From positions 186,001 through 250,000 of the IMG/VR virus record IMGVR_UViG_3300027782_000025: DNA of 64,000 nucleotides. One strand, 5' to 3'. A program made the translations under genes and the position numbers. Below the pieces are notes generated by a model. It ran no database searches, was not told the DNA's origin, and saw only the letters and a program-made list of their open reading frames with translations. Shown here piece after piece: positions 1,408 through 53,864 of this stretch (the first letter of the stretch is position 1; the number at the start of each line of letters is the position of its first letter).

Positions 1408-4400
1408 ATGGCAAAATTTACACCTCGTTTCCCTAGAAACGCTACTGACGGTCAAGAAGTTGCAGATAAGTATGGAAATGTTTGGAGATATTATTCTTCC
1501 ACTGACACCTGGGTATCAATCGGTTATCTTCAGCCTCCAATTATTGTCGATGAAAAGAATGATGGCTTTGTCTCCCCCGAAATTTATAAAAGAATACAAT
1601 ATTATAAAAACTTTAAAGAAGCTCTTAATCAAGCGCCCTTAAAGATATTGCCAGGTAGGGGAGCATACTATTATTACTTTAGATCTAATAATCGACTGAT
1701 TAAATTTAAGGCTGAATCTAAAAGCCAACTGCGTATAGAAGTCAATATGCAGCGGCTTTATCGTTTATTATATAATGAGAGATGCAAAGGCCCGACCGGT
1801 CAACGTGGACTAATTGGTGCGGCTGGAGTCGATGGTCTAGCAGCCCCCGCTGAACTCTCATTTAATCCAACATTTGACAATAATATAATGTCTTTTGCGG
1901 TCTACACCCCTCAGCCTTTAGAGGCTGGTGGAAAGATTTTTCTTCCGAATGGCCACGTACCAGATATAAGTGTTAGATTGGATGAGCTTGACCCCTCCTT
2001 CACTCCCTCTCTCCTCCCATCCTATGTCGAATTACCAATTTATCTGTTTACAATAAGCAATGAATACAAAGAATACATGAGGCTTCAAGCCGATATAAGA
2101 AATAAATGTGCGGCTGGTAACGGATTGTTCTATTTCTGTTTAAATGACGTTATTAAAAATCTTGACTTAGATTCGATAAATGCCCAAAGTGTGTTAGAAA
2201 TCAAGATTGACCCGACCGGCGCTGTTCCAGTTCGTTTTACAGGCGAGCTTTCTGCACTAATCGATGAGGGAGCATCAGCAGCGCTTATCGGTTATGATAA
2301 GGATTATCATATAGCCTATGGAAAAATAATCCTTAAGGTAGGTTCTTGGAACACTAATTATGCTGTAAAATCTAGACAATGTGGTCCAGACGGGGCTAGG
2401 GGTGACATTGGTTCTTCTAAATTAAGTATAAGCGAAGTGGTTATCGAGCCTGGTAGTACGGTCTTAGCTAAGAGGCCACTTATTGGTCTAAGATATGATA
2501 AAAGCTCATCTACTTTATTATCGTCATTTGGTGATCTTAGTATAGAGACGAATGTTGATAATATTTCTTTGGTTCCAGGATCTACAAATTTAGCTTTTGA
2601 AAGCCCAATTGATAGTGTTCTAGCGAGCGTTGAAACTACTGCTAATAGATATAAATCTCTAAGAATTCATGAGACCAGTATCGTTGGTTCTGAGACTCCT
2701 AAGACTAATTTTTTTGTCTGGCAGCCTCTACCAAACTGTGTTAGTAAGCATAATTATGAGAAGAATGTCTTTGATTGGGTGCCTTTAACTAGCAAGGAAC
2801 CTTGTGAAATTGGTGGTGTTACTTGGTATGGTGCTGATGGCCCTAAGAATGCTCAGTATCCATGGCAGATTTTAATACCTGCTTCTCCTGAGGTTGAAAA
2901 TTGCTGCCAGGAGCCTTTCTTCTATTGCCCTAATGTGCAGATGGGTGCTTGCAGCGATGTGGGTGGCGGTTCTGGGACTCCGGCCCCATCTACGCCCACT
3001 GCTTCACCAACACCAACAGCTTCACCGACGCCTACAGCTTCGCCCACTCCAACACCTACCCCAACACCAACACCTACCCCAACACCTACCCCAACACCTA
3101 CCCCAGCTGGGTCAGGTAGAGCCTTGTTTGGTTTTGGTATTACTACAGGAAATGTTTATGTCAGTTTAACCAACCATGTTTCGAATACCGGTGTTGTCGC
3201 ATCTGATACTACTGGTGTCGGTACCGCTAGAATGGGTCTGGCTGCTGCGGGTTATGGTGGTGATAAAGCTTTATTCGGATTTGGGATTTATAATGACCCT
3301 CTTGATGTTGTGGTCAGTACGACAAATCTTGTGTCGAATACTGGCGTGGTTGCGACCGACACAAATGGCGTTGGTACTCCAAGAATAGATCCGGCCGCTG
3401 CTGGTTATGGTACAGATAAGGCCATATTTGCATTCGGGAATACTGGAATTACTTTTACTTTTACCAGTTTAACTAATCTTGTATCTAATACTGGTGTTGT
3501 TGCGACCGATACGGCTAATGCTTCTAGTACTCCAAGAACTTCTGGCGCGGCAGCTGGTTATGGTGGTGATAAAGCTATTTTCGGATATGGGCTTTCGAAC
3601 ACAAATCCCTATGCATATATTAGTTTTACAAATCTTGTTTCTAACACCGGTGTTATGGCGTCTAATACCGCTGGCGTTGGTACTGCTAGGGCATATTTGG
3701 CGGCAGCAGGCTTCGGTGGTGATAAGGCCATATTTGGATATGGATCCACAAATAGCTCCACTTATGCTGAGACGAATATTGTTAATAATCTTGGTATAGT
3801 TTCAACTAATACTGTAATTGCTGGTTCTGTAAAGACGGAATCTTCCGCTACCATCTATGGTGGCAATAAAGCCGTATTTGGATATGGGTCCGGAAATGCT
3901 AGTAAGACTTATCTAAATCTCGCAAATTATGTTTCAAGCTTTGGCGTTGTTTCGGCGGATACAGCTATTGTTGGTACTGCTAGAAATAATTTAGCAGCGA
4001 CTAATTATGGTGGTAACCCAGCACCGACACCGACACCATGCTTAGACCTATTAGAAAAAGTCGGGCAATCACCATCAAACGTCGTATACCCACAAGACAA
4101 TGTCGTCTCACCAGACGGACGGACATTATATGTTTTAGGTGGTGGCCTTGGTAATACCCCCACCAAAGTGGCTATATTTTCAATAGACAAAAGCACTGGA
4201 CTTATAACCTTTGTAGAAGAAACAGCCGCTGGATACTCGCCTTATGGAATATGTGTTTCACCTGATTCAAAATATGTTTATATTTCTTCTATAACTGGTC
4301 CGCTCACAGATCCTACTTCAGTCTATGTGATCACAATGTATTCAAGAAATGCAGCCACAGGCAGTATAACATCGATAGGAACTGTTGGTCCAGTGGTTAC

Positions 4401-7400
4401 TAACGGTCAAATGGGTAAATTAATATTTTCTCCAAATGGGCTATTTGTCTATACTGCGACCTACAATACTATAATTTCTATTTATACTAGGAACGCTTCA
4501 ACAGGTGTTCTTGCCCCGCTTGGTTATGTCGTCGTAACCATACCTACATCTAACACTTTTTATATTCGTGGATTGTATATCTCGCCGGATGGCTTAAACT
4601 TATATGTTTCTCAAGATGAGACTTTTAATGCTGGCCGGCAGGTCATAGGTACTTCAATATCTAATTTTAGCATAAGCCAATCGACTGGACTGCTAACCTA
4701 TGTCGATAGAATAATAGGCAATGAAGTATTTTATAACGAAGGTATTGTTTCGCCGGACGGAAAAACCGTTTACACTTTAGGCACCAAAAATCCTTCCAAT
4801 ACCCTTGGAGCTGATGCTGTTACTATTTTTTCGAGATCTACTTCTACAGGTAGTCTTACACTCAGCGGTTCTATTGCTACAGCCGCAGTACCTACCGATA
4901 TTATAATATCTCCGGATGGTTCAAACGTCTATGTTAGCAGCGCAATTATAGTAGCTATAGGCTCCCTAGGCGCCCTTACGACATATCGTAGAAACATATC
5001 CACCGGAAGCTTGACATATTTAGGAGAAATACCTACTGGCGTCACGCCACGAGGTTTATCGATTTCGCCAGATGGTTCATATATCTATCAGGGAAATGCC
5101 TTAGATCCTTCTGTTTTTATATTTTTTAGGTGCGTCTCACTATCGCCGACACCGACTCCTACTCCGACACCCTCATATGTTACCGCTGGTCGAGCCGTAT
5201 TTGGATTTGGCGTTAGTGGCAGCCTTGCAACTTCGAGCGTTACTAATCTAGTTTCAAATACTGGTGTTGTCGCGACCGATTCTGCCGGTATTGGAACGGC
5301 CAGACATTATTTGGCTGCAGCTGGCTACGGCACAGATAAAGCTATATTTGGTTATGGGATTACATTTGGCGGCAGCATAAATACAAATTTAACGAATCTT
5401 GTTAGTAATATTGGAGTTATCGCGTCTGATACATCTGGCTTGGGAACCGCTAGAATGGGCTTAGCAGCAGCCGGCTATGGCACTGATAAAGCCATATTTG
5501 GCTATGGCTATACTACAGGTTATGTCGCTATTACTAACCTTGTTAATAACACTGGTCTCGTAGCGTCTGACACTGCCGGGGTCGGCTCGGTTAGGAATTT
5601 TTTAGCTGCTGCCGGTTATGGTGGTGATAAAGCAATTTTTGGCTTTGGGCAAAACAATACCTCAATATATTCGATGACTAACCTTGTTAGTAACACTGGA
5701 GTAGTCGCGTCAGACACAAATGGTGTTGGTAGCGGACGATCAGGCTCTTCAGCAGCCGGATATGGTAAAGATAAGGCGATTTTTGGCTTTGGTTTCTTTC
5801 AGAATGTTTATATCTCCTCGACTAATCTTATCAGTAGTATCGGTGTTGTTGCATCAGATACTTCCGGCATTGGTACCGCCAGAATGCTTAATGCAGCTGC
5901 CGGATATGGTGGTGATAAAGCGATTTTTGGATATGGAAGAACTAGTTCTACTGCAGCAGTAAGCATAACGAATCTTGTTAGTAGCACCGGCGTTGTCGCC
6001 ACTGATACAACTGGCATCGGCACTGAAAGATACGGGCTTGCCGCTGCTAGTGTTGGTGGTAATTCGTTGACACCTACACCTACACCTACACCAACACCAA
6101 CACCAACACCAACACCAACACCAACACCAATCAATCCATGCATAGTAACGAACTGGTCCGCTGTGCCGACGAAAGTCACGGGCGGCAGCTCTTACTATAT
6201 AACTTACGGTCAAGGTCGTTTCATAAATCTAATCACCACCGAATCAATTGAGATAGCAGATGGTGGAACTGTTTCTGTCCCCAGCTACTTGCAGACATCA
6301 ATCGATGGTACTAATTGGACAGATACTAAATTACCAAAAAATTATGTTTTTAATGGCTTTAATGCTTATCCTTACTTTTATTCTAAAATAGCAGTTAGCG
6401 ACAAAAGAATAATCTTTTGGGCAAACAATGATGTTTATACTCCTAACTACGATATTATTTATACAGATGATTTTGGCAGCACGTTTAATTCATATAAATT
6501 CGACGGAAAATATGGTTTCGAGTTTCCTCTGAGTATAGCTTACGGAAACAATAAATTCCTTCTAGTAACACAAGACATATACACCGCGATTGGAAGGAGT
6601 GTTAACTTTTATTTTTCTGATGATGGCTTAACTTTTGGCTCTGCCACTTATAGATTTTCTTTGCCCGGCCCTGATTGGAATGTAACGTTTACTAACGGCT
6701 TATTTTTTACATTTCCAGCAGGAACTATGACCGGCAGCCAAGTTTCGACAAAGGGGTATATGTCCGATGGCGGTCCCAATGCTTTTATCCCTTTTGATTT
6801 ACCTGTCGGAGCAGGCAATATTCGTAATCTAGTTTATGGTGCCGGAAGATATGTCTTGACTTCTGAAAAAGGCGTCTACTCTAGCCAAGGACCAAATCTT
6901 GGTCCTTGGGTTAAAGCTACATTGCCAACTACTATTACAACTGGTTATAGCGATAGCGCTTTCATTACTTTTGGATCTGGTACTTTCGTAATTATGCCTT
7001 TTAGAAAAAGCGTTCCTGATACACTTCAATATGCGCTTACTTCTCAAGATGGTATTAATTGGATCGTTACCGGTAGTCTTTTTACGTATCCTACTTCTCC
7101 TAACGCTCAACCAAGGGCCAACAATATAGCGTTTGGTTATACCTCACAAGATAAATCATCTTCTAAATTCATTATTAGTGCTATAACGACTACTCAAGGC
7201 ACGCTCGGCGCGCCATTAAATTATGGTAATGTTCTTGTCGCTCAATGTGTTACTACTCCAACACCTACACCAACTCCGACTGCTACGGCTTGTTCCTTTT
7301 TAACTTGGCCGCCATTTTTTGCTAATAGTAGTGCTGCTATGACTATTACTAGTATAAATACTGGTGCGGTTATGCAAGCTACCTTAGGAAATACTATAGT

Positions 7401-10400
7401 TGTAAAAGGTAATTTAAGTTATACACCACCACAAAACGACTACAGGGAATTTTACCAATACACTAGTAGTAGTGGCGCAATTATAATTGCTTCTCCATTT
7501 TCTGCCGGAGATAAAGTATTAATTAACGAAAATTCTGCATCACAAGGTACTAATGGTTACTATTTTATCTCTAAGATTATTAACGGTATCCACACGATCG
7601 TTTGTTCTCTTACACCAACACCTACTCCAACACCGACTCCGACACCAACTCCGACCACAGTTACTACTGCTTCAAACATTTGCGGATATCTCTGGGAAAG
7701 ATCAGATATCCCATCTGACAGGATAATTGTCGATGCTGCGACCTTCGGCCTTAATTATTACGCCATCACACACAATGATATCCTTGGTAATAGTTTACCA
7801 CTAGATGTAGGTTATAAGAGTAATTCCGGAAAGACATGGACTACGTTTACATTACCCTCGTTGTCAACAGGATACTGGAATAAGATAGCTTTTTTAGCTG
7901 GCGCAAGTACACCAGTGTTTGTGATCTACAGCACACCAGGCGTCGTCCGGCTATCGACCGACGATGGTAAAACTTGGGCCAAACCGTTTGACGCGGCTCA
8001 GGTAGGTATTGATCTGATTATCGTTTCTATTAGTTATAATACTTCTGCCAGCGTGCTAGTTGCTATTCATTCAGACGGCAAAGTGTATAAACATGGGATT
8101 CACTCTACAGATCCAACCCTGCTCACATTTACACTAATAAATCTACCTACGATCCCGAATAATGTCTGGCTAACAGTTAGTTTTAGTGATAAATTTTATC
8201 TGATTGGCAAGAACGCAGACGGCTCTTCATATGATACTTATTTAACATCAATAGATGGTGTTACTTGGGTCGTAGAGAAATTCCCACGTTCTGATAAATG
8301 GACAGGCATTGAGGGTCATAGCAATACGATTGTCGCTATTACGCTGGCCAATGGCGCGGCGGTTAAGACTGGTACACCATCGGCATGGCAGAATATTGTT
8401 TTACCAAATAATGTTTCTTCCTTTAGCTTTATTAGAAGTTCATCAACCGCCTCGTCTTTTTATCTTGGCGCTGCGTTTCTAGCAGCGGTAAAAGTCCCGA
8501 GTGGTGTAAACAATTCTGATATAGCCCATTCTACAGATGGTATAAATTGGTCGACCTCGACATTAACTTTTAATACTGCAGCCCCAGGCCTTAGCTTTAT
8601 AAATTTCTTTAAAGAAAACAACACCTTTTTAGTTATTTATAACGGCGGCGCCGATGGCGCTAAGGCTGCCGTATCATACTGTAACGAAATATCTTGTTTA
8701 ACATCTTGGACAGCGAGCAGAGCGCCAGACTTTACCAGCCCGCTTGGCGGTTTGCCGAATTACTCCGACTTGCTCTTTACATATGGTTCTAATTTTATGT
8801 TGCTTAATGCAACCACTTCTGACCTTAAGATATCTGATGATGGTATAACTTGGGCGTCTTTTAATGTCTATGGTGCTTCGACACCTGGGACCTCAGTTTG
8901 GAAAGATATTGCTGTTGGCCCGAATACGACATACTTGATACTTTCAGAGGAAAAAACAGTCGCTAAGTCTGTAGATGGTGGAAGAATTTGGCAAATATAC
9001 TCGACTTTACCGACACTCCCTAGTTCAGCAAGCAAAAACTGGCTTCAAGCATGCTACGGCGCTGGAAAATATGTGGCGTTAAGTTATTCTAACATAGGTG
9101 CATATTCTGTCGACAATGGTGCAACTTGGTCACAGATGACGTTGCCTGTATTCGCTGCATGGTCTGAATTGATTTACGCTAATGGCCAATTTGTGGCTAT
9201 AGCATCAAAAGAATTATCTAGTGGTGCTTTGGTAAATGCTGGATACGCGATGGTCTCTACTGATGGTATTAACTGGAGCATATTTAATCTGCCAGTTAAG
9301 ACAGATCCTTGGGTGGATATTGTTTATGGAAGCGATGTCTTTGTGGCTATACCTAGCGCACTAGATGCGAACTACGTCGCGGTTTCTTCTGATGCCAAAA
9401 AATGGACAAAGATATCGCTTCCAACACCAAGAATAACGCCATCCGTAAAATGGGTGCGGATATCATATGGGGCTGGCATCTTTCTTTTAACTTCTTCAGA
9501 TACTATACAGGCAGTATCTGCTGATGGGTTTAGCTGGTTTATTCGCAGTGCTGGTACTCTGTCCCCAATTAGTGATGCCATCGTAGCCTTTGGTAATAAT
9601 CGTTTTGTGGCGTTTTCATCGATACCTGAACGTGGTAATCCTGCTAACATTGCTATATCAATTTGCGATGCTACACCGCCCCCTTTCAGTAACCCTGACA
9701 TTAGCTGTTTTAAACAATGGCCAAGCAATGCTACTTCCGGCGATGCCTCTTATGTCAATACAGTGGTAACTGGCATGACATCTGGCGCAACGCAAATTAA
9801 TACGATTGTTAGCGAGCCATGCGTTTTAGGATTATATTTCCTTGATCCTAATAAAACCCAACAAAAACCCGTTTGGTATTATGGTCGATTTGCCTTTTTT
9901 AATAATGGAAGTATAACAGGTGTTAGCTCTAAATTTACGACTGCTAATACCCTTGGCAATCAGATGACATATGTTTATATAGATGAATCGACTTTCTTGT
10001 TTCGCACTGGTCTGCCTGATCCTAAACTAAATGATTATTTTAATAACGAAGACTTAACCGTTTACAATTTTAATGGTACTAATTCTATTTACCCAGGTGC
10101 TAAAATCGGCATCTCGGATGGGACATATAAGTATGTTGGATTAAGAGACTTAGGCGGCTTTACCTATTATGAAGCGACCTGTAAACCAAAGAATGTAATT
10201 GTCTATACTGTTTACTTAACTTATAAACATTCATTCTATGGTGGCCTATCCAATGGCCGTAACTTTATATTAAATGAAACTGTTAATATTGTAGGTGGTG
10301 TATCGAATTCCGCTGATTATGTAGTAACAGCCATAACACCTAGAAAAGGCTCGCCTGTCAATCCGCTCTGGGAAGGTGTAGAAGTGACTCTGGCGTGTCC

Positions 10401-13400
10401 TTTGATTACACCAACACCGACTCCGACTCCTACGCCGACTCCAACTCCGACCACATTTATAACTCCATCAATTTGCGGTAAATTACTTGCATGGGGATAT
10501 AATGGTCTAGAGTATCAGTTGGGGACGGGTTCAAAGGAATTGTTCGTTAGTGATCCTGATTTGGTGTTGATAGCAAATCCGATAACTTTTGATGGCACTA
10601 GTTATTTAACCACACCGATACCGGTTCCTGGTTCACCAGTAAGTTGTCTTTGCGCTCTAGATTATACGCAAGTCACTGAACCTAACGTACAGCTAGGAGA
10701 CAGAAAGACTGGGCCTTGCTCGCCAGGCTGTGATGGCTTATGCGAGTATATTGCTTGGGAAAACAGGGGGGTCTTATTTTGGAGGGCCTTGTCTTCTAGT
10801 TGTCAGATTACTCCAGTAAGTTCGCCGAATACACCGCCAGTGGCGACGCCGACACCACCGCCCGTTGCGACGCCGACACCGCCGCCAGTGGCGACACCAA
10901 CCCCAACACCGCCACCTTTAAATTGTACTCACGGTTGCAATGCTGGTCTTGGTTATCTCGCAATCACGGCGTTGGGTCCTAACAATACTAAGACAGTCAC
11001 TTTAACTGGCTCTAATGGCAAGAGTTTTAGTGCCGGTGAAACAATAATAATACAAGGTGTTGCGCCTGCTCCGGCGATTTGCTGGGATAATGTGAATGGC
11101 ACATATAAAATATTATCTGTCAATAATCGCCAAATTATTTTAGAATGTGTTTCTTTAGGATGCTTTAACGGATGGGCAAGTGGTAGTTTTAATGTTCCTG
11201 TATATGCTGGGATTACGGTGATCTCGTCTGGCGGCGCAGAAATAAGAGGTATAAAAACATCTGGAAGTACAGACTATTGGCTTGCTTTCGCTTGCAGTAC
11301 TATGTATTCCCCAATAACAGCGCCAATACTTACACCAAGCGATTCAAATGTTTATGTTGTAAATGATGTAATCCCACAAAACGTCGAATGTTTTGATAGA
11401 AATTCTACTAATGGTTCTTTACTTTCTAAAGGCATCATTGCTATCGGTCCCGCTACTGGAAATACTTCAAAGGGTATTTGCATCTCTGAAGATGGCACTA
11501 GTGTTTATGTCGGTACTAATTCATTAATAAAGATATACTCAAGAGATAAAACGACAGGCACACTAACAGATAATGGCACTATCTTATCGAATATAGCTGA
11601 CCAAATGTATTCGATCTGCATTTCTAAGGATGGCACCAGCGTTTATGCTGCTAGCCGATTAGGTAAACTTCACATGTTGAGTAGAAATACTACATCTGGA
11701 GCGCTTGCTGTATTGGGTGAAATTAGAACTTGGGGATTACAGGAGGGACTTTGCGTTTCAGAAGATGATAAGAGCGTTTATGTTATTAATTTGAATTCGC
11801 CAGCATTAGTTTCTATATATTCAAGAAATATTTCGACTGGCGTATTAACGGCGAATGGTCAAATAGGAGATTATAAACAGGGTGATAATTTTAATCCTCA
11901 TGGAATCTGTATTTCTAAAGATGGTAAAAATGTGTATGTGACGGCTTTTTATAAAGATTATGTTCTTTGGTATGATAGAGATGCTACCACTGGAGCTTTA
12001 GTGTTAAGGGGCACCGTTCCAACCCCCGCAAGCCAGCCTTGGGGGATATGTATATCTGCAGACGGTATAAGTGTTTATGTATCAAGTAATAGTGGCGCTG
12101 GTGTTTCGATATATAGCAGGAATGTTTCAACTGGTGCATTAGTACAAAATGGAAAGATTAACACACCACAAAGTTTAGCCTCATACGACATGTGCGTTTC
12201 AGCAGACGGGACTAGCGTATATGTGGTTTTTAACACTGGCTATGTAGGAGAGTACAGGAGAAATACTTCTACTGGCTTATTAACTTATGCTGGAGCTAAT
12301 AAAACAAATAGTACTAATCCACAGTCAGTCTGCATCTATCCTAAAACTTTTGGTCCAGCAACGACGCCGACTCCAACACCGACTCCAACACCAACACCAA
12401 CACCAACACCGACTCCAACACCAACACCAACACCAACACCAACACCAACACCAACACCAACACCAACACCAACACCAACACCAACACCAACACCAACACC
12501 AACACCAACACCAACACCCAAAAATGCTTGTACATTCATGACGATTTATTTTAATGAGTCTGGAAGTACAACCCAAGGCGGTCTAGCGCCACCCACTTGC
12601 GGAAGCACGATAACATATACCGTTGCTAACCCGACTGTCAATAATAATAATAAACTCGTTACAGCTTCAGTAAAGTTTTCGGATGTTCTTGAACCACACA
12701 CTCAAGGCGGCAGCGGTGAAAGATGCAAGCCACTCACTGCTATTATATATAATAATGGGCAATATTTTGGCACGATGTCATTCAATGACATTACTCTTGT
12801 ACCTGGGCATGCAGGTGCTAACGGTGCTTCTGTGTTTCAAGGCATATTAGGGATTTATTCGCTTTTCTTAGTTTGGACGTTTGAGTGTGCTCCCGCTGCT
12901 GCTCCAATAATAGTACCTCCTACACCTACTCCAACGCCGACACCAGCCCAAAGGGTTTTATGCAATATCTTGTATGGCGATACTTTTTCATATTTTGGTA
13001 TTAGTCATTTAGTGTCTGGTTCAAGCGGCATGCTGCTAATTAACCCTCCTAGTAGAGGTGGAGTTAGTTTCGACGGTTATTTATATGGTTCTGGTTATTG
13101 GGCTGGAAGGCCAAATACTTCGACACAGCTGAAAAGAATAGATGGAAAAGTAAATCCTGTAGTAGCTGCGCCTGGTCAGTGGAGATATGTTAATACATTC
13201 GGAAGCATGGCTTATGCAATCGATGCAAATAGCGATCTTTACACATGGGGTATCGATACATTTGGTGAATCGTGCTTGGATAGAAAGGGTGAGACAATAG
13301 CTGAGCCAACCAGAGTAACCGATGAATTTATGCCAAAACTTACAAAAATGAGTTATAATCAGATTGCCCCTGGTAACGGTTTTACAGCATTTTTAACTAA

Positions 13401-14664
13401 GCAAGGTGAGATTTACTATGTCGGCAAAAACAGTATGGAAGCCTACTTGGGCGTTAGTCTAAAATGGACATCTGACACTGCTTTCGAAAGAATAGATAAT
13501 AATGGCGTTGCCTATTTATATAAGCCAACATTAATAGCCAGTAGTCCAACATATAAACAGATTTATGCGTGTGATTCTGCACTGATCATTGTTGATGTTT
13601 CCGGCGGATTACATGTTATCGGTGAGAACAAATGTGGAGTGCTGGGGATAAACCAAAAGGAAGGTTATACCACTAACAAAGTAATCCCAATGTTAAATCC
13701 TATCCCAGTACAAACTTTAGGGTCAGGTGCTGGGCCTGGTGTGGAGGGAATAGGCTTAGGCGTTGGTGTCGGGTTTGGCGTCCGCACGTCAAGAACAAAT
13801 GCTATGGCTATCACACGCGACGGCGATTTATTGTTTTGGGGCGGTTTTGTCGGACAAAGCGGATTGCCTACAAACATATACAAGCCTACTAAATTGACTT
13901 TGCCAGAATCTGGCGTGATTGATTATCAGCCAAATACTTCTGGATGCCTAGTAGTATTTAAGAGCGGCAATGTGTACGCTTATGGTTATAGTATTATCGA
14001 TAATAACAATGCTCCTGATACATTCTCTTCAGATTTTGTCCAAGTTGGATTTGGGTCGATTAATGGTGCTTTGGTCCTAGCCCATGGCTCCCCAGAACGA
14101 AACGGATATGTCTTAGTAAAGGATTTTGTAAAACCGCAATTGCCGGTTGGCTTGGGCCTGTGTATGACTATATTCGATAAAATCGCAAATGCCGATACAA
14201 TAACTGACGCTAATGGTATTCAATTCTATATTGGCGACACTATAGAAGTAAAACTAGACGTCACAACTAACCCCTACAATGGCAAGTATACGATCACCAA
14301 CATTGAAAAATTTACGGTTGGTACTAAGATAACCAAACAGATGAGATTAACTTGCTTATCTGGTAATTGTTTGGCTGGCGGGTTCCCTGGGGTGCTAACG
14401 GTTCCGGCTGTGCTTCCAGATCTAAGAAGCCTAACATCTACCAGCGGCGCTTCAATTATTCCAGCTCCGGCCGGAACATCGCCTGTATACACTATTACTT
14501 TCAATCCTAGCTGCGGAACTAGCCCGACACCAACACCGACAACACCAACGCCGACACCGGCTACACCAACGCCGACACCGGCTACACCAACGCCGACACC
14601 GGCTACACCAACGCCAACGCCGACTACGTCTAAATTAAAAGTACTATACACAGCGTGGAAATAA
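1408..14664 (+). CDS. Giant modular virion fibre/adhesin protein (4418 aa)
   Basis: N-terminal FPRNATDGQ...W.Y...W motif and short Gly-X-Y stretches. Two clusters of six [10 protein letters not shown](F/Y)G Kelch-like repeats, two lactonase-like propellers (SPDG/SEDG repeats), Asp-box (S.DG..W) domains and RCC1-like segments, separated by Pro-Thr linkers. Confidence 0.75.
2977..3105 (+). repeat. Pro/Thr linker tandem repeat
   Basis: Degenerate ACNCCN hexamer array encoding [10 protein letters not shown]...(PT)n. Confidence 0.9.
6070..6129 (+). repeat. Pro/Thr linker tandem repeat
   Basis: ACACCT/ACACCA hexamer array encoding (TP)10. Confidence 0.9.
12364..12519 (+). repeat. (CCAACA)n microsatellite encoding a (TP)n linker
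   Basis: 17 perfect CCAACA copies at 12415-12516 within a longer degenerate array. Confidence 0.95.
14521..14625 (+). repeat. 21-bp tandem repeat encoding (TPTPTPA)n
   Basis: ACACCAACGCCGACACCGGCT repeated three times near the 3' end of the 4418-aa gene. Confidence 0.85.
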
Positions 14665-14676: not shown

Positions 14677-17600
14677 ATGAGGCTTACTGATAATATAAAA
14701 GCTAAAATAGAGGAACTCTATAATCTTACACCAGAAGATATTCACGGTGTTAGCCTAGGATATAAGCATAAAAGCGGCGCTAACACTGGCGAGATAGGCA
14801 TAGTATTTAGCGTTCTTAAAAAACTAAGTAGAAGTGAGTTAAAACCATCAGATATCTTGCCATCTACTATTACTGTAGACGGCGTTGATATTATTACTGA
14901 TGTTATAGAGGCTAAGCCAATTAAGTTAGTCTCTTGCTATCCTAACATGAGCTCTACTCCGCTGACTTCTTATATTGGCACCGATACAAATATCACACGA
15001 TTGCAAGGGCATGATACAGCCCTTCTAACACCGATGAAAGGTGGTCAAGAATTAGTACAATTTCCTACTAATTGGACAGCTGTTAATAACAACGGCCAAA
15101 CGAGCTATAATTTCGATGTGGGCACATTATGCATGTTTTGTATCGATAGTTTAGATTTTAGGGTGGTTGGTCTTACGAATAGTCACGTTGCAATTGACAG
15201 AAGAAATATAGCCACAGACAGAGATATAGTATTAGAAACGCAAGATCCTTATAACATTTACGAAGACATGACGTGGGTTTATGATGGAAAGAAGCATCCG
15301 CCCAGTATGGCTGCCTTTAATACTTTTAATAACCTTAATCTGGTCGGTAGATTAAAGAGGTACATCCCTGTGACTTCAGGCATAAATTATGTAGACGCAG
15401 CTCTCTACATTCCTAACGATTCTTATATTGATGTGGCTTCATCTTATAACACCTGGCACCCTATTGGCAGCGATAATTACGCATTTAAACCAATACCTCC
15501 TTTCGCTTCAACCAGCGAGATTGACAGTCTATTGGCAAATGCTAGCACCACACCAATATACAGCACCGGCCGTACAACCGGGCCAAAAGGGTTTAGTCAG
15601 ACTGCATCATGTAAGCTCATAATTACGGGCATTGGTGCTACGGTTACGGTCAACAATAATGCAAATTCAGCTAATAGCTGGGGTGACCTCATAGTATTTA
15701 AAAATGCTGATTCATCTTATTGGCCTATAGCTGGTGGAGATTCTGGATCTCCAATGATAGCTGTTATCGGCGGTGTCGAAAAAATAATAGGAATAGCTTT
15801 TGCTGGTAGTCCAGACACGGCATACGCTTGCAGAATCGATAGAGTTGCGCAAGAGCTGAAGATCGAATCGTATAAAAGCTTTCACACGACTACCGTTGCA
15901 GTACCTGATACTTTTACTATAGACTACACCGATCCGAGAGCCAAGCAAGCGACCATAACAGTGAATGGTGCGGTATATTATCAAGCTGGCTTTACTTTGG
16001 TTCAAGTTGCTACACCAACACCGACAGCTACTCCGACAGCTACTCCGACAGCTACTCCGACAGCTACTCCGACAGCTACTCCGACAGCTACTCCGACAGC
16101 TACACCCACAGCTACACCCACAGCAACACCGACAGCTACACCGACAGCTACACCCACAGCTACACCCACAGCAACACCGACACCCACAAATTGTTTTTTA
16201 TCTTGGCCTCAAGCTACCTCTTATTCATTTGATTATATGACTATTACTAGTATTAATTCTGGTATGGTTTTAAAACCAATCTTTGGAACTTCTAATATAG
16301 TAATAAACAGCAATAGAGAATTTTATCAAAAGGACTTTACTAGCGGTAAGCCGGTGACTTGCACCCCATTTTCTGTCGGAGATAAAGTTCTAATAGCTCA
16401 GAACTCTACACCGATGCGGGGCTATGATGGCTATTATTATATTTCTAAGATCACAAGCGGTATCCACTCTCTTGTATGCACTCTTGCAGAAGTGTCAACA
16501 CTGTGCGTAGGCGAATTGACAGGCCCCTGTGAAACGGAAAGAAACGGCACTGTTTATTACTTAGCTGTATCTCCCGATGGCTTAAATGTATATGCAACAA
16601 TATTTCAAAATCCAACGATATTAGTTTATAACAGGTCTAAGACTACAGGCGCATTAACATTAAACAGTACCATAACTATGGTTGCTGCGCTCCCAGCAGA
16701 TATAATCGTATCTCCAGATGGTTTATATGTATATGTCACTAACGGTAGTAACGGCCTTACAAAAAGCGGACCATATATATCAATTTATAGGAGAGACAAA
16801 GCTACGGGTGCACTGACAAGCGCTGGTACCCAATACACAGGCATAGATTGGGATTTTACTCTTGGCATTGCCATTTCTCCAGATAATTTAAATGCATATA
16901 CTACAAATTATGGGTCTGGTACAGTATCGATTTATAATAGAAACATAATCACAGGAGCGTTGACAAGTGCCGGCACCATAGATGCAGCAGTTAAGCTCGC
17001 TGTTGGTATATCAGGCAGTCAACCACACGATGTGATCGTTTCTCCTGATAATTTGAATGTATATGTGACTAATACCATGCCGCCAACAAATGGTTGTGTA
17101 TTATCGATCTATAAAAGAAACACAACTACTGGCGCACTAACAAGTGCTGGCACTGTACCAACTGGTAGTAACGCTAAGCGCATGTGTATTTCTCCCGACG
17201 GTAAAAACGTATATGTGCTTCATGACGGCAGTCCCGGCAAATTAACTATTTTTAATAGAAACACGACCACGGGGGCGTTAACAAATGCCGGCGACATAGA
17301 TACAGGAAATTGGCCTTGGGGTGTTAATATCTCTCCAGACGGCTTAAATGTGTATGTGACAAAAAACGGTCCGAACGAAATGTTCATCTATAGTAGAAAT
17401 AAGGTCACAGGCACCTTGATTAAAACAGGCACCAGCCTTATAAGTCTGTTTAATGCGCCTACTGATGTGGTGGTTTCACCAGATGGCTTAAATGTATACT
17501 CAGGGCTATTCAGTGGGTCTTTTTCTAGCGCGATTCCCGGGGGCTATGGCGGATCAGTTTCAGTCTTTAATAGATGTTTACCAACGCCTACACCAACGCC

Positions 17601-20511
17601 TACACCTACACCTACATCCACGCCGACGCCAAGCATTATTCAATCATTCCCTTCTGATGGTGGTGAATATAAAGTTAAATATGCAGAAGAGAATTATGGC
17701 AAAGCACTAGCCGTCAGTGGTGATGGTAAGATCCTATTGGTTAGTGCTCCGATCGCCTCAACAGTATTTCAGAATACGACCATGACTAAGTGCGGAGCGG
17801 TTTATATTTATGAACGAAATGCTAACAATGTGTGGGTAGGTTTACAAAAAATATTCTCACCCAATCCAACAGCAAATGCAAGTTTTGGTGAAGGTTTAGC
17901 ATTATCACATAATGGCCAAAGAATATTCGTCGGCCAACCAAACGCTAACTCTGGCGCCATTATGGTTTACAATAGAGTCGGCAATGAATACATCTACGAT
18001 AGTGATTTGCCGATCACATCAGACATGCTATTACATTCGACATTTAATGCCGAGGTGGTTAATTGGGGATATCGTTTGAGCTGCACTCCTGACGGTCTAA
18101 CCGTAGCTGCTATTTCTCCAAACACAATAGCTCCTGGCGAATACACTAAGCAATTAGATAATTGGCCAACCGGATTTTACAATGGCTCGAATCCTACGGT
18201 ATTCACTGTCAGTATCTATCAGCCATCCAGTGGTGCTGAATGGCGCTCGACAAAGAATGATTATGGGATATCTTATATCAGAAGAAGCGGCGGCGGCATT
18301 GAGGTGACAGCAAATCAAAGCAAAGTATCGATAAAAGGGTATTTCAGACAAAATGAACCTGTCTATATTCAGGACATATCTGATATTCACCCTGAATATA
18401 CTGGGTTCTACACTACGACCCAGCCAGCGGTTACTAGCGGCATCTATTATACCATGAACATTTACCCATTAGGAAGCAACGGAATAAGAACAACTACAGA
18501 TCCTATGAGCTCATACGCTGGCAATGTTGCTGTGTTTAATTATCAGAATGCAGGGTCTAGTATGTCTTGGGTAAGACAAGGTTACATGTTGGCAGATTTT
18601 GCCGGATATTCTGAGGCCTCGTTATCATTTAGCGACGACGGTTTAAGATTATTAGCAAGTGTTAAGCGCTATGGAATGCTGATTTCATATGTATTCAAAA
18701 GCCCTTCACTATTATCGAGCTATGCGTTAACCAACATTTTGGCTCTAATCGACCCTTATCCTATCGATAACGCCGGTATCTTTGGTATCAGTGGTGATGG
18801 TAAAATGGCAATGCTAGACTATGCTTTATATTATCTTGACTCGTTGCCTATCCCAGATTATATTACAGCGACACCAAGTGCGGTACTAAAAAACATCACT
18901 TATAATGGCGTCGAGGATTTTGCTAGAAACGCGAACTATTTAGCCAAAGGCGCACCGCAGAAGTACCAGATCATATCAGATCAAAGCAGCAACGGTGCTA
19001 AGAAAAATACTACATTCAGTTATGCATTAGGTTATGGTGGTGAACCTGTTCCAGATGAATCATACATATCGCCAAGCTCAGCGCTCGACTATTCTGCAAT
19101 GTTTATCGGTGATGATAAAGCTGTTAGTAAGAATGGTGATGTGCTGGTAAGATCTTATAAAGATGGTGGCGTGAGATCTATATTATTCCATCAAAGCGAT
19201 AAACAAATTATTACAGCGCCGGCAGGCATGGTGTGGTTTGGTAACCAAGTCGAAATGAATCCAGATGGTACCTTCTTTACTTGTGTTTACGGAAAGCGTT
19301 CTGACACCGATAAGAGTATTAGCTATGGTAAATGTACCTATGTCAGAATGGGCCAACGTTTCTATAATCAGCTCGAAAATAGAATCATATATAATAACTT
19401 CCCAGCCGCAGTTTATCCTTTAACAAATCTCGCATTGCCGACCACATATGTTACGGACTCTAAGTGCATCCAGCAGATAACCAATGTTTATGGAACTGAC
19501 GCTAATTTATTAGGCATTTTTAGAGATTTAGACGAAGGTGTGTCGAAACGAACAACGACATCATGGAATAAGAATTGGCTTACAAATAATGCAGACAGGA
19601 GTCTTTTGTTTACTTCTAATACCACAGGAACGAACGGGCCAGTCACTGGAAAGAATAGTGTCGCTATTAGCGAAGATGGCGTTTCTTTTGTGGTTGGTTC
19701 GTTGTTTTCTAATAACGGCACTGGAGCCATTGAGCTTTATACTAGAGATGTGGCGCAAGATGGTACTTTTTACTCTGCTTGGTCAGCTGGTACATCGGTC
19801 TTTAAGGGTGCTGACTTCTTGTCTGTAACAGTTGATAAGGCTAATTTAAAATACCCATTATTTGGTTATTCTGTAACTATCCTAGGAACTGTTGGAAACA
19901 GATGGATCGCTGTTGGGGCTCCTAAAGCTTATGATGGCAAGGGCGTGGTGTGGATATGGAGAGTCGATGAGCGAGACCAAACGACACCCGACACTTATAT
20001 TTTAATGGGTGAGAATGCCAATGAAGGCTTCGGGACTGCTGTCAAGATTTACATAAACCCTGACACGACATATATGACTCTAGCTGTAGGTACTGATACT
20101 GGATTGGTAAAAATGTATGCTAAGACTGGGCCTAGCACTACTCCATTCGAACCAACCGGCATTATAGTGGCTCCAGACGGCAAAGATTCTGGCTTTGGTA
20201 AAGATATTAAAACGACCAGAGACGGACTCCAAAACATCATCATCACTGCGCCTTTAGCATCATATCAAGGCACTAAGCTTCAAGCTGGTGTAATATATGT
20301 TTATTCATCAGACGGAACGACATTGTTAAAAACATATAGGTCAGAATCACCACAAGCCAACGACCAAACAGGCTTTAGAGCTAGCGACCGATTTTATACT
20401 AACACTGGGGCAGTAGGATATGGTTTCAGGACTATCACTGCTATAGGTTCACCTGGTCGTAATAATGGCAATGGGCAAATCGAAATTACTTTTGAGAACC
20501 CTTATCCTTAA
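14677..20511 (+). CDS. Modular fibre protein with N-terminal trypsin-like (NAL1-type) serine protease, lactonase-like propeller and FG-GAP repeats (1944 aa)
   Basis: GVSLGYK...TDVIE prodomain-like N-terminus. Catalytic triad motifs TNSH(170)V, VD(240)AAL, GGDS(356)GSP. (TPTA)n linker, SPDG repeats, and FG.AL.VS...VSAP...GAVY.Y repeats. Confidence 0.75.
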   Translation: MRLTDNIKAKIEELYNLTPEDIHGVSLGYKHKSGANTGEIGIVFSVLKKLSRSELKPSDILPSTITVDGVDIITDVIEAKPIKLVSCYPNMSSTPLTSYIGTDTNITRLQGHDTALLTPMKGGQELVQFPTNWTAVNNNGQTSYNFDVGTLCMFCIDSLDFRVVGLTNSHVAIDRRNIATDRDIVLETQDPYNIYEDMTWVYDGKKHPPSMAAFNTFNNLNLVGRLKRYIPVTSGINYVDAALYIPNDSYIDVASSYNTWHPIGSDNYAFKPIPPFASTSEIDSLLANASTTPIYSTGRTTGPKGFSQTASCKLIITGIGATVTVNNNANSANSWGDLIVFKNADSSYWPIAGGDSGSPMIAVIGGVEKIIGIAFAGSPDTAYACRIDRVAQELKIESYKSFHTTTVAVPDTFTIDYTDPRAKQATITVNGAVYYQAGFTLVQVATPTPTATPTATPTATPTATPTATPTATPTATPTATPTATPTATPTATPTATPTATPTPTNCFLSWPQATSYSFDYMTITSINSGMVLKPIFGTSNIVINSNREFYQKDFTSGKPVTCTPFSVGDKVLIAQNSTPMRGYDGYYYISKITSGIHSLVCTLAEVSTLCVGELTGPCETERNGTVYYLAVSPDGLNVYATIFQNPTILVYNRSKTTGALTLNSTITMVAALPADIIVSPDGLYVYVTNGSNGLTKSGPYISIYRRDKATGALTSAGTQYTGIDWDFTLGIAISPDNLNAYTTNYGSGTVSIYNRNIITGALTSAGTIDAAVKLAVGISGSQPHDVIVSPDNLNVYVTNTMPPTNGCVLSIYKRNTTTGALTSAGTVPTGSNAKRMCISPDGKNVYVLHDGSPGKLTIFNRNTTTGALTNAGDIDTGNWPWGVNISPDGLNVYVTKNGPNEMFIYSRNKVTGTLIKTGTSLISLFNAPTDVVVSPDGLNVYSGLFSGSFSSAIPGGYGGSVSVFNRCLPTPTPTPTPTPTSTPTPSIIQSFPSDGGEYKVKYAEENYGKALAVSGDGKILLVSAPIASTVFQNTTMTKCGAVYIYERNANNVWVGLQKIFSPNPTANASFGEGLALSHNGQRIFVGQPNANSGAIMVYNRVGNEYIYDSDLPITSDMLLHSTFNAEVVNWGYRLSCTPDGLTVAAISPNTIAPGEYTKQLDNWPTGFYNGSNPTVFTVSIYQPSSGAEWRSTKNDYGISYIRRSGGGIEVTANQSKVSIKGYFRQNEPVYIQDISDIHPEYTGFYTTTQPAVTSGIYYTMNIYPLGSNGIRTTTDPMSSYAGNVAVFNYQNAGSSMSWVRQGYMLADFAGYSEASLSFSDDGLRLLASVKRYGMLISYVFKSPSLLSSYALTNILALIDPYPIDNAGIFGISGDGKMAMLDYALYYLDSLPIPDYITATPSAVLKNITYNGVEDFARNANYLAKGAPQKYQIISDQSSNGAKKNTTFSYALGYGGEPVPDESYISPSSALDYSAMFIGDDKAVSKNGDVLVRSYKDGGVRSILFHQSDKQIITAPAGMVWFGNQVEMNPDGTFFTCVYGKRSDTDKSISYGKCTYVRMGQRFYNQLENRIIYNNFPAAVYPLTNLALPTTYVTDSKCIQQITNVYGTDANLLGIFRDLDEGVSKRTTTSWNKNWLTNNADRSLLFTSNTTGTNGPVTGKNSVAISEDGVSFVVGSLFSNNGTGAIELYTRDVAQDGTFYSAWSAGTSVFKGADFLSVTVDKANLKYPLFGYSVTILGTVGNRWIAVGAPKAYDGKGVVWIWRVDERDQTTPDTYILMGENANEGFGTAVKIYINPDTTYMTLAVGTDTGLVKMYAKTGPSTTPFEPTGIIVAPDGKDSGFGKDIKTTRDGLQNIIITAPLASYQGTKLQAGVIYVYSSDGTTLLKTYRSESPQANDQTGFRASDRFYTNTGAVGYGFRTITAIGSPGRNNGNGQIEITFENPYP
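16009..16188 (+). repeat. 12-bp tandem repeat encoding (TPTA)n
   Basis: Perfect GCTACTCCGACA copies followed by GCTACACCCACA variants. Confidence 0.9.
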
Positions 20512-23843: not shown

Positions 23844-24144
23844 TCCAACTATCATGATTATTATATCGATGCTGATGATTATGATGTCACTGATTATGAT
23901 ATTACTAGTACAATCGACCATATTACTTAATAAGATTATTAATGCTGAGGAAAAGCAGCCGAAGCTTGTTGATAAACAACAAATTATAGGCTATCAACAA
24001 TCATCGCTTGAAAAAGAACCTGTAAAAAAATTCGATACTTTAAAAGTGCCAGATTTGGATCCATTTTCTATAGCGCCTAATTTAAAAAAACCACCAAAAT
24101 CAGCTGGTGGTTTTGGAAATAAAACAGATCAAAATGATCCATGA
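23836..24144 (+). CDS. Hypothetical single-pass membrane protein
   Basis: Strongly hydrophobic N-terminal ~28 aa followed by a Lys/Pro-rich tail; overlaps both neighbours. Confidence 0.6.
   Translation: MSDPTIMIIISMLMIMMSLIMILLVQSTILLNKIINAEEKQPKLVDKQQIIGYQQSSLEKEPVKKFDTLKVPDLDPFSIAPNLKKPPKSAGGFGNKTDQNDP

Positions 24145-52787: not shown

Positions 52788-53864
<1,077 letters not shown>

What the first reader, a model, noticed from the sequence alone, without database searches (positions are those of the whole stretch)
14677..15870. Intact trypsin-like (NAL1-type) protease fused to a fibre protein
Seen: a prodomain-like start (GVSLGYK...GIVFSV.KK...ILPSTI...TDVIE) and full triad motifs H170 (TNSHV), D240 (VDAAL), S356 (GGDSGSP), followed by a (TPTA)n stalk, a propeller and FG-GAP repeats. 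Established: phage fibres usually carry glycan depolymerases, and their proteases are typically C-terminal S74 chaperones. Inference: a virion-displayed protease that cuts a proteinaceous host surface (S-layer or similar) or matures the giant fibres.
Basis: partly seen in the sequence, partly recalled or inferred. Interest (0 to 1): 0.7.

Follow-up and report, generated by a model that had tools for sequence, protein, structure and literature searches.

The report
Phage NAL1-like protease docked to giant protein
A jumbo phage carries an intact plant-NAL1-type serine protease at the front of a 1944-residue propeller protein. This protease belongs to a widespread, undescribed phage gene pair in which the neighbouring protein ends in a short tail predicted to plug into the protease.

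Summary
ORF 14677-20511 (1944 aa) starts with a 444-aa module holding H170, D240 and S356, which are invariant in 86 homologues. Its AlphaFold model (pLDDT 92.5) matches rice NAL1 (ATP-binding domain plus protease) at Z 28.

The "prodomain-like" start is the NAL1 ATP-binding-like domain. It is not shown to be a prodomain.

The module is followed by a (TPTA)n linker, a 7-bladed propeller and an FG-GAP-like region.

- **Family.** It is large (551 clusters at 50% identity) and was found only on phage contigs. About half to three quarters of members are stand-alone genes of about 440 aa. Fusions always carry the module at the N-terminus.
- **Partner tail.** In 43 of 49 loci the gene immediately upstream (median gap 3 nt) ends with a P/T-rich linker plus a short aromatic tail. 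Here that gene is the 4418-aa ORF, ending ...KVLYTAWK. The same motif occurs in 5 of about 547 other neighbouring genes.
- **Docking model.** A complex model places the tail as a β-strand between residues 411-416 and 434-440, a hairpin lying beyond the part of the model that matches NAL1. Score 0.92; best control 0.05. No catalytic residue is among the confident contacts.

Best reading: an active protease that forms a docking junction of a composite fibre or adhesin. Virion display, substrate and cleavage are untested.

The parts
14677..20511 (+). ORF of 1944 aa: NAL1-like protease module, then linker, small domain, 7-bladed propeller, linker and FG-GAP-like region
14677..14934 (+). aa 1-86: NAL1 ATP-binding-domain-like (NAL1_N) domain. 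K30, K49, D75 and V76 align to the NAL1 ATP ligands R120, K139, D166 and V167.
   Evidence: Pfam NAL1_N E 0.023, below the curated cut-off; PHROG 20754 'protease' E 2.5e-10 on aa 14-85; profile against PDB; NAL1 paper PMC12012508; conserved columns
15028..15879 (+). aa 118-401: double beta-barrel serine protease domain (PA clan)
   Evidence: VIA-align Z 17-18 to streptogrisin and alpha-lytic proteases over model 118/120-399/401; Z 28 to NAL1 over model 1-408; Foldseek
15184..15186 (+). Codon of H170 (TNSHV), the catalytic His. It aligns to NAL1 H234.
15394..15396 (+). Codon of D240 (VDAAL), the presumed catalytic Asp
   Evidence: invariant in 86 sequences; motif position; equivalence to NAL1 D291 is inferred and not aligned residue by residue
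15742..15744 (+). Codon of S356 (GGDSGSP), the catalytic Ser. It aligns to the NAL1 GDSGS motif.
15901..16008 (+). aa 409-444: C-terminal hairpin element (..TFTIDYT..YYQAGFT), beyond the part of the model that matches NAL1. It is the predicted docking site for the partner's tail.
   Evidence: outside the NAL1 match, which covers model 1-408; bacterial NAL1-like clusters align only to about 1-386 of a 428-aa viral cluster representative (rank-1 Atlas hit, not shown to be a relative); Y434, Q436 and G438 conserved; contacts 411-416 and 434-440 with the tail
16009..16188 (+). aa 445-504: (TPTA)n linker, encoded by a 12-nt tandem repeat of 13.8 copies
16192..16485 (+). aa 506-603: small domain, 46% identical to aa 1964-2068 of the upstream 4418-aa protein
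16546..17556 (+). aa ~624-960: 7-bladed lactonase-like beta-propeller. It is paralogous (32-37% identity) to propellers in the 4418-aa and 1768-aa ORFs.
   Evidence: Pfam PF10282 E 2e-24
17581..17631 (+). aa 969-985: second PT linker
17632..20508 (+). aa 986-1944: FG-GAP-like repeat region. Its fold was not modelled here.
   Evidence: Pfam FG-GAP_2, marginal; 61% identical over aa 1070-1944 to the C-terminal part of the L007 homologue
1408..14664 (+). Upstream partner ORF of 4418 aa: short collagen-like run (aa 128-145), seven PT linkers, propellers and RCC1-like repeats. It stops 12 nt before the protease ATG.
14518..14628 (+). aa 4371-4407 of the partner: terminal PT linker
14629..14661 (+). 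aa 4408-4418 of the partner: C-terminal tail [11 protein letters not shown], the conserved tag predicted to dock on the protease hairpin
   Evidence: motif at 43 of 49 upstream genes against 5 of ~547 others; it is the only linker-plus-tail in the 274.6-kb record; complex model scores 0.92 against 0.05

Best explanation
The first 444 residues are a catalytically competent NAL1-type serine protease module. It has three parts: an ATP-binding-like domain (aa 1-86), a chymotrypsin-fold domain with H170, D240 and S356 (aa 118-401), and a C-terminal hairpin (aa 409-444) that lies beyond the NAL1 match. The module is half of a conserved two-gene phage cassette. The gene immediately upstream encodes a highly variable protein, here the 4418-aa giant. 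That protein ends with a flexible P/T-rich linker and a short aromatic beta-strand tail, here KVLYTAW. The tail inserts as the middle strand between residues 411-416 and 434-440 of the protease module. This tethers the protease to the C-terminal end of the partner; in this phage it also tethers the protease's own 1500-aa propeller and FG-GAP-like array. The active site stays free. The result is a composite fibre or adhesin with an active protease at its junction. The protease most likely cuts proteins on the host surface during adsorption. Shown: module identity, fold, invariant triad, the cassette and the tail motif. Predicted by model: the docking mode. Inferred: persistence in the virion and the substrate.
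For: Identity and fold:
- AF2 model pLDDT 92.5.
- NAL1 fills the top 34 Foldseek hits at E 2e-15.
- VIA-align gives Z 28, with model 1-408 aligned to NAL1 92-458.
- The 86-sequence profile hits NAL1 in the PDB at E 9.5e-9.
- The triad is invariant.

Cassette:
- 141 tblastn-confirmed phage loci were found, of which 80 were kept and 56 analysed for neighbours.
- The upstream gene carries the tail motif in 43 of 49 dereplicated loci, against 5 of ~547 other neighbouring genes.
- The median intergenic gap is 3 nt. Partner lengths run from 94 to over 4400 aa.
- Only one such tail exists in the whole 274.6-kb record.
- A relative's contig carries two proteases (L007, L008), and each has its own tail-bearing upstream gene.

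Docking:
- ipSAE is 0.92 (runs 0.94, 0.85, 0.92) against a best control of 0.05. In the tool's calibration this mark was reached by 58 of 80 solved complexes and 2 of 110 mismatched pairs.
- Partner pLDDT is 65 and the runs share at least 89% of contacts.
- The tail lies antiparallel to 411-416 and to 434-440. H170, D240 and S356 are not among the confident contacts.

Structural and host-interaction role:
- In 40-kb relatives the stand-alone gene sits between large linker-rich proteins and a tail protein or fibre (phrog_8763, phrog_8469), downstream of a major head protein and virion structural proteins.
- In close relatives the flanking genes are 84-92% identical, but the fusion protein is only 54-61% identical and differs in length, as expected of a receptor-binding protein.
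- 57 of 153 family proteins (cluster representatives and first-search hits) exceed 600 aa and mostly carry extra binding-type domains (RCC1, FG-GAP, LamG, FN3) C-terminal to the module. This only makes sense if the module stays attached to something.
Against: - There is no cultured relative and no proteomics. GenBank phages gave no hit, so presence in the virion is not shown.
- In this jumbo phage the cassette lies among replication and glycosyltransferase genes, not in a recognisable tail module.
- PHROGs gives no structural annotation for the giant partner.
- The docking rests on one model run with one pair. The controls were unrelated peptides, not shuffled or other beta-strand tails. The calibration did not include small molecules riding along.
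- An invariant triad next to a conserved partner tag is equally what a dedicated processing enzyme would look like.
- Oligomeric state could not be modelled because of the size cap.
- ATP binding was not scored.
Confidence: 0.45

Rival explanations
1. A trans-acting assembly or maturation protease. The protease docks on the C-terminal tag of the freshly made partner, helps it fold or bundle, and then trims the tag or linker. It need not remain in the virion. This would be a two-protein version of the C-terminal S74 intramolecular chaperone, occupying the gene position of a tail-fibre assembly protein.
For: - The protease gene always lies directly downstream of the tagged gene, with a median gap of 3 nt. 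From general knowledge, that is the classical position of tail-fibre assembly genes.
- The triad is invariant.
- The tag sits at the extreme C-terminus after a flexible linker, and 1-7 variable residues follow the second aromatic residue. This is compatible with a scissile site.
- NAL1 forms trimers and hexamers (PMC12012508), which could bring three chains together.
Against: - The model places the tail outside the catalytic cleft.
- Over a third of family proteins examined exceed 600 aa, and those annotated carry large binding-domain arrays on the protease. These arrays would be lost if the enzyme were released.
- Some partners are only 94-121 aa, which hardly need a folding helper.
Confidence: 0.27
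2. An intracellular protease that is not part of the virion. It would cut host or phage proteins during infection, with the propeller arrays and the tagged partner acting as substrate adaptors, much as NAL1 degrades chosen regulators inside a cage.
For: - There is no signal peptide at the N-terminus.
- The residues that bind ATP in NAL1 are conserved. A nucleotide ligand is easier to picture inside a cell.
- The jumbo-phage neighbours are replication genes.
Against: - In small phages the gene sits inside the head-tail-fibre block.
- The extensions are PT- or T-linked bead-like arrays of surface-binding domain types, and they evolve mosaically.
- Phage structural proteins also lack signal peptides.
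Confidence: 0.1
3. The N-terminal ~117 residues are a prodomain that is cut off to activate a fibre-tip protease.
For: - The linker at aa 88-100 is the only low-confidence stretch of the model.
- The structurally nearest classical proteases, alpha-lytic protease and streptogrisins, are made with N-terminal pro-regions (general knowledge).
Against: - The region is the counterpart of NAL1's retained ATP-binding domain. It packs on the protease in a single confident model with pTM 0.93.
- Its ligand-binding residues are conserved.
- In NAL1 this domain forms the trimer interface.
Confidence: 0.06
4. A purely structural connector whose protease chemistry is vestigial.
For: The predicted docking does not involve the active site.
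Against: H170, D240, S356 and the GDSG motif are invariant across 86 sequences that share as little as 29% identity with the window's module.
Confidence: 0.04

Closest known systems
Rice NARROW LEAF 1 (NAL1) serine protease (PDB 8PMI, 8PMG, 7Y77, 8HAS)
   Same: - The two-domain core matches: an ATP-binding-type N domain followed by a chymotrypsin-fold domain with His-Asp-Ser (Z 28, model 1-408 to NAL1 92-458; profile E 9.5e-9).
- The ATP-ligand positions are conserved.
   Different: - Sequence identity is only 15-18%.
- Pfam NAL1_N scores below its cut-off, and Nal1_C gives no hit down to E 1.
- The module lacks NAL1's first ~90 residues, which supply the strand exchanged in the hexamer.
- It adds a 36-residue C-terminal hairpin.
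- It is encoded by phages, paired with a tail-tagged partner gene, and often fused to large repeat arrays.
Peptidase family S1E (streptogrisins, alpha-lytic protease)
   Same: These are the best classical match for the catalytic domain (Z 17-18 over model 118-401). They share the GRTTG and GDSGS motif style.
   Different: S1E enzymes are secreted with a removable pro-region. They have no ATP-binding-type domain, hairpin or partner tag.
HtrA/DegS proteases (PA-clan trimers that bind C-terminal aromatic tails of client proteins via a PDZ domain)
   Same: Both have a PA-clan fold (Z 12-13) with a peptide-binding element C-terminal to the protease. That element is predicted to take up a partner's aromatic C-terminal strand by beta-addition. 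That HtrA and DegS bind YxF tails is general knowledge.
   Different: No PDZ domain is detected. The binding element is a 36-residue hairpin. Activation by the tail is not tested.
S74 C-terminal intramolecular chaperone-protease of phage fibres and spikes
   Same: Both are proteases associated with phage fibre-like proteins.
   Different: S74 sits at the C-terminus, uses a Ser-Lys dyad and cleaves itself off (general knowledge). Here the module is N-terminal, has a His-Asp-Ser triad on a chymotrypsin fold, and gives no S74 hit.
Branched receptor-binding complexes and tail-fibre assembly proteins of cultured phages (G7C, CBA120, Mu and T4 types; recalled from general knowledge, not tested)
   Same: Both attach one fibre protein to another through a dedicated docking element, and the helper gene lies directly downstream of the fibre gene.
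   Different: Known adaptors are N-terminal non-enzymatic domains or small chaperones. None is a NAL1-type protease that takes up a C-terminal tail.

Membership tests
NAL1-type serine protease (PA clan; Pfam NAL1_N PF25608 plus Nal1_C PF25819) | An ATP-binding-type (NAL1_N) domain directly precedes the protease domain, with the same fold and order. | tested here: met
   VIA-align Z 28, rmsd 3.4 over 326 residues, model 1-408 to NAL1 92-458. Foldseek E 2e-15. The profile alignment covers both domains.
NAL1-type serine protease (PA clan; Pfam NAL1_N PF25608 plus Nal1_C PF25819) | The sequence scores above Pfam's curated cut-offs. | tested here: not met
   NAL1_N scores 14.9 bits against a cut-off of 27, and Nal1_C gives no hit. 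Only 16 of 86 family members reach E 0.01 for NAL1_N, and 2 of 86 for Nal1_C. This is therefore a distant relative outside the current models.
NAL1-type serine protease (PA clan; Pfam NAL1_N PF25608 plus Nal1_C PF25819) | A His-Asp-Ser triad in that order between two beta-barrels. | tested here: met
   H170, D240 and S356 are invariant in 86 sequences. H170 aligns to NAL1 H234 and S356 aligns to the GDSGS motif. D240 is placed by motif and order only. Triad geometry could not be measured because no coordinates are available.
NAL1-type serine protease (PA clan; Pfam NAL1_N PF25608 plus Nal1_C PF25819) | An ATP-Mg site formed by R120, K139, D166 and V167. | tested here: inconclusive
   The aligned positions K30, K49, D75 and V76 are invariant or at least 90% conserved. 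ATP was included in the complex run but was not scored.
NAL1-type serine protease (PA clan; Pfam NAL1_N PF25608 plus Nal1_C PF25819) | A trimer-of-dimers cage assembled by exchange of an N-terminal strand. | not testable with these tools
The module has no counterpart of NAL1 residues 1-91.
Peptidase S74 intramolecular chaperone of phage fibres | A C-terminal self-cleaving domain with a Ser-Lys dyad. | tested here: not met
   The module is N-terminal, has a His-Asp-Ser chymotrypsin fold, and gives no Pfam S74 hit.
HtrA/DegS family | A PDZ domain, C-terminal to the protease, that binds client tails. | tested here: not met
   No PDZ hit was found. The C-terminal element is a 36-aa hairpin. Only the principle of tail binding is similar.
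Phage tail fibre / receptor-binding protein | Homology to known fibre families, or location in a tail module. | tested here: inconclusive
   PHROGs gives no fibre hit for the fusion, its partner or the downstream ORFs. In 40-kb relatives the stand-alone protease lies next to a tail protein or fibre and downstream of head genes. The C-terminal part evolves mosaically.

The most novel reading that the evidence does not exclude
Phages have a general, previously unrecognised plug-and-socket system. A short C-terminal aromatic tail after a P/T linker is the plug. A phage-specific hairpin on a NAL1-like protease is the socket. The system couples or bundles otherwise unrelated surface proteins of 94 to over 4400 aa onto a catalytically active hub. 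The hub may oligomerise as NAL1 does. The partner's tail may replace the exchanged strand that NAL1 takes from its own N-terminus. The enzyme may even resolve a cleavage of the tag into a covalent link, as sorting transpeptidases do.
Probability: 0.3. Interest if true: 0.85.

Novelty: new variant of a known kind. Interest (0 to 1): 0.74.

Why it matters
NAL1 is known as a plant yield gene whose protease forms a cage. A large, unannotated phage clade of the same architecture shows that the fold is far older and more widespread.

Virion-borne enzymes known on phage fibres are almost all glycan- or peptidoglycan-directed. A fibre-mounted protease would point to proteinaceous host barriers as targets in uncultured aquatic phages.

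The tail-and-hairpin pair would be a new way of assembling composite fibres. It would also be a simple sequence rule (linker plus aromatic tail immediately upstream of the protease gene) for finding the partners in metagenomes. If the docking is confirmed, the pair could serve as a small peptide-tag and binder tool.

Tried and rejected
- **Single-sequence Pfam.** No Trypsin, Nal1_C or S74 hit; only NAL1_N, below its cut-off.
- **NCBIfam.** Nothing meaningful.
- **Single-sequence search of the PDB.** Only a chance antibody hit. The NAL1 link needed profiles and a model.
- **tblastn against 50,697 GenBank phage records.** No match, either with the window module or with a distant stand-alone homologue. 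blastn of the polymerase region also gave no match.
- **Two pattern scans of 185,579 prokaryote genomes.** No relative found. Sensitivity is limited to the patterns used, so absence from cells is not proven.
- **The search for related loci with the 86-sequence alignment.** It failed because no block was conserved enough. The 8-sequence alignment worked.
- **Literature searches** for NAL1 with phages, and for fibre-borne trypsin-like or S-layer proteases, found nothing relevant.
- **PHROGs on the partner.** Nothing for the giant partner's first 520 residues or for the 1768-aa ORF's first 180; only a weak unknown-function hit (phrog_19989, E 0.0023) on partner aa 521-1553.
- **Tail as an active-site substrate.** Considered and set aside. 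The confident contacts do not include the catalytic residues. By analogy with chymotrypsin topology (my inference), they lie at the far end of barrel 1.
- **A second copy of the module in this genome.** None at E 0.01.
- **The fusion's own C-terminus (..IEITFENPYP) as a tail.** It does not fit the motif, and 0 of 48 protease genes do.
- **ATP.** It was added to the complex run but is not scored by the tool.
- **Statistical co-variation between tail and hairpin.** Not attempted, because the clades are too confounded by descent. The paired sequences are listed.
Full report
**Setting**

The window is bases 186001-250000 of a 274.6-kb IMG/VR virus record, with CheckV completeness of about 70%. It is a jumbo phage. 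Its genes include a DnaE-type polymerase split into two ORFs, a UvsX-like recombinase, a DnaB-like helicase, an SSB, glycosyltransferases and several giant ORFs. No GenBank phage resembles it at the DNA level, and none matches the protease at the protein level.

**Checking the observation**

- ORF 14677-20511 is open for 1944 codons and is preceded by AGGA.
The (TPTA)n run spans aa 445-504 and a second PT linker spans aa 969-985.
- Pfam finds a 7-bladed lactonase-type propeller (E 2e-24) and a marginal FG-GAP_2 match downstream.

**What the N-terminal module is**

- Single-sequence searches are nearly blind to it. Pfam gives only NAL1_N at E 0.023, below its cut-off. The PDB sequence search gives nothing real. 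PHROG 20754 ('protease') matches only aa 14-85.
- A word-seeded search found ten homologues of the first 445 residues. All are long proteins with different C-termini.
- An exhaustive search of 1.84 billion cluster representatives found 551 clusters at E 0.001 or better, and 130 at 1e-30 or better.
- In an 86-sequence alignment with 29-62% identity to the query, H170, D240, S356 and the GDSG motif are invariant.
- A profile of that alignment hits rice NAL1 in the PDB at E 9.5e-9. The match is colinear through the N domain, TNxHV and GDSGS (E 2e-5 with eight sequences).
- The AlphaFold2 model built on the alignment is confident (pLDDT 92.5, pTM 0.93).
  - Foldseek's top 34 PDB hits are all NAL1 chains (E 2e-15), followed by streptogrisins and alpha-lytic protease.
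  - VIA-align gives Z 28 for model 1-408 against NAL1 92-458. That range is exactly NAL1's ATP-binding domain plus serine-protease domain as defined in PMC12012508.
  - It gives Z 17-18 for model 118-401 against S1E proteases.

The 'prodomain-like start' is the NAL1 ATP-binding-type domain. The NAL1 residues reported to hold ATP-Mg are R120, K139, D166 and V167. In the profile alignment they fall on K30, K49, D75 and V76, which are invariant or at least 90% conserved in the phage family. ATP binding itself was not tested.

Residues 409-444 lie outside the NAL1 match. Bacterial NAL1-like clusters of 300-370 aa align only to about residues 1-386 of the 428-aa viral cluster representative ranked first by the Atlas. 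This last element ends in the conserved YWQAGF strand. It is therefore an apparently phage-specific addition.

**The family and its gene neighbourhood**

- A scan of IMG/VR confirmed 141 loci, of which 80 were fetched. About three quarters of these encode stand-alone proteins of 404-475 aa.
- The rest are fusions of 666-1974 aa. The module always starts within a few residues of the N-terminus.
- Among the 153 family proteins in hand (cluster representatives and first-search hits), 75 are 380-500 aa and 57 exceed 600 aa.
- No relative was found in 185,579 prokaryote genomes by pattern scans. The nearest ESM Atlas clusters are 94-100% viral. BFVD holds one close, uncharacterised entry.
- In a conserved group of ~40-kb contigs (L060, L073, L066, L032, L058) the stand-alone gene lies in a structural block. 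The order is:
  - major head protein (phrog_11589);
  - virion structural proteins;
  - two large T-linker-rich proteins;
  - the protease;
  - a tail protein or tail fibre (phrog_8763, phrog_8469);
  - further members of the same linker-rich family.
- In the closest relatives of the window (L006, L007) the order is the same as here: giant ORF, protease fusion, then ORFs of 642, 460, 102 and 516 aa. The flanking genes are 84-92% identical. The protease fusion is only 54-61% identical and differs in length (1974 and 1603 aa), although its N-terminal module is 80-83% identical.
- The fusion's small domain (aa 506-603) and its propeller are paralogues of domains in the 4418-aa and 1768-aa ORFs. 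These proteins are built from one domain kit.

**The unexpected finding: a tagged partner**

Listing the C-termini of the genes immediately upstream of the protease showed a common ending, whatever their length. The ending is a P/T/S-rich linker followed by a short strand with two aromatic positions, plus 1-7 further residues. Examples are ..[13 protein letters not shown] here..SLDVLYTAWD..SMSVIYIAWE..GPSTIWIKFDPITPA and ..GFNTIYTHFEAI.

- A loose pattern, [TVIL][ILVM][YFW]xx[FWYLI] within the last 16 residues, matches 43 of 49 dereplicated upstream genes. It matches 5 of about 547 genes at the other positions from -8 to +8. One of those five is the true partner of a tandem protease pair.
- The gap between the partner's stop codon and the protease start has a median of 3 nt, ranging from -41 to +18.
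- Partners range from 94 to over 4400 aa.
- In the whole 274.6-kb record only the 4418-aa ORF has a linker plus tail, and there is only one protease.
- A related contig has two proteases, each with its own tagged upstream gene (L007 and L008).

This is a conserved two-gene cassette.

**How tail and protease may meet**

I ran one complex prediction: the module with its alignment, ATP, Mg and the last 30 residues of the 4418-aa ORF.

- It scored ipSAE 0.92 (runs 0.94, 0.85, 0.92) against 0.05 for the best of three controls. In the tool's calibration this mark was reached by 58 of 80 solved complexes and 2 of 110 mismatched pairs.
- Partner pLDDT is 65, and the runs share at least 89% of contacts.
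- Tail residues 23-28 (KVLYTA) pair antiparallel with module residues 434-440 on one side and 411-416 on the other. The tail is thus the middle strand of a small sheet completed by the phage-specific hairpin.
- The other confident contacts are 157-162, 179-195, 227-228 and 245.
- H170, D240 and S356 are not among the confident contacts. By analogy with chymotrypsin topology the contact patch is at the far end of the first barrel. That is my inference, because no coordinates are available.

The model supports docking at an exosite; it does not prove it. The controls were unrelated peptides, and only one pair could be run.

**Interpretation**

- Shown: an intact NAL1-type protease module; a phage-restricted family, as far as these searches reach; a cassette with a tagged upstream partner.
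- Predicted: strand-insertion docking on the hairpin.
- Inferred: what the chemistry is for.

I favour a persistent junction. More than a third of the family proteins examined carry long extensions beyond the module, and those annotated are binding-domain arrays. These arrays would be useless if the module were discarded. The tail is placed away from the cleft. The variable parts evolve like receptor-binding proteins. The protease would then sit at the distal end of the partner and act on host surface proteins.

The main rival is a dedicated maturation enzyme that recognises and trims the tag. Both its gene position and the invariant triad fit that equally well. An intracellular role, a cleaved prodomain and a dead structural connector are less likely, for the reasons given in the rival explanations.

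**Comparison and novelty**

The module is a distant relative of NAL1 by structure and by profile. It does not pass Pfam's cut-offs, and it lacks NAL1's N-terminal strand-exchange region. It works on the chymotrypsin plan of family S1E. Its predicted tail capture recalls PDZ-bearing HtrA and DegS proteases in principle, but not in fold. It is unlike the C-terminal S74 chaperone-protease.

I found no paper linking NAL1-like proteases to phages, and none describing fibre-borne trypsin-fold proteases. The library is incomplete, so this is absence of evidence only. I rate the finding as a new variant of a known kind. The tail-hairpin cassette is the part that may prove to be new in kind.

Noticed in passing
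window 24107-25657 (+): This 516-aa ORF matches Pfam Volactin (PF25216), an actin-fold family, at E 7e-38 over aa 157-512. It has a K/P-rich N-terminal extension. It is 91-92% identical in the two close relatives, making it the best conserved gene of the block.
   Followed up: partly
window 26351-27751 and 29018-31741 (+): The DnaE-type polymerase III alpha (phrog_405) is split into two ORFs covering profile positions 42-439 and 440-1043. Three small ORFs lie between them, one with a C2H2/BED-type zinc finger (28672-29031).
   Followed up: no
L060:12455-14792 and the neighbouring genes of L060, L073, L066 and L032: In the ~40-kb phages, many genes around the protease share a ~75-aa N-terminal domain (..GPFDLYSD.D.FTTPF..). 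This includes both large upstream proteins. The domain occurs alone (74-111 aa ORFs) or ahead of poly-T linkers and variable domains. It is possibly the shared virion-attachment end of these proteins.
   Followed up: partly
protein P0007 (1319 aa, JGI metagenome): This homologue has an insertion of roughly 400 residues inside the protease domain, between the segment following the His motif and the GRTTG/GDSGS half. Its source names the protein an uncharacterized delta-60 repeat protein, and PF17164 is among its Pfam hits.
   Followed up: no
L038 and L039 (positions -1 and 0): Two protease genes lie in tandem behind a single tail-tagged gene.
   Followed up: no
window 2992-3105, 6070-6130, 12373-12518, 14524-14627, 16018-16182, 17580-17632: The PT linkers of both giant ORFs are encoded by near-perfect 6-, 12-, 18- or 21-nt tandem repeats. 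They are likely to vary in copy number. Glycosyltransferase genes (46671-48635) and a nucleotide-sugar epimerase gene (52788-53813, minus strand) lie in the same window, which raises the question of linker glycosylation.
   Followed up: no
window 1789-1842 (aa 128-145 of the 4418-aa ORF): A short collagen-like run of six G-X-Y triplets lies near the N-terminus of the giant partner. It hints that the partner may trimerise.
   Followed up: no
genome G000:C1:255774-271508 (outside the window): Two more very large ORFs (3921 and 1309 aa) follow the 1768-aa ORF on the same strand. Neither ends in the tail motif.
   Followed up: no
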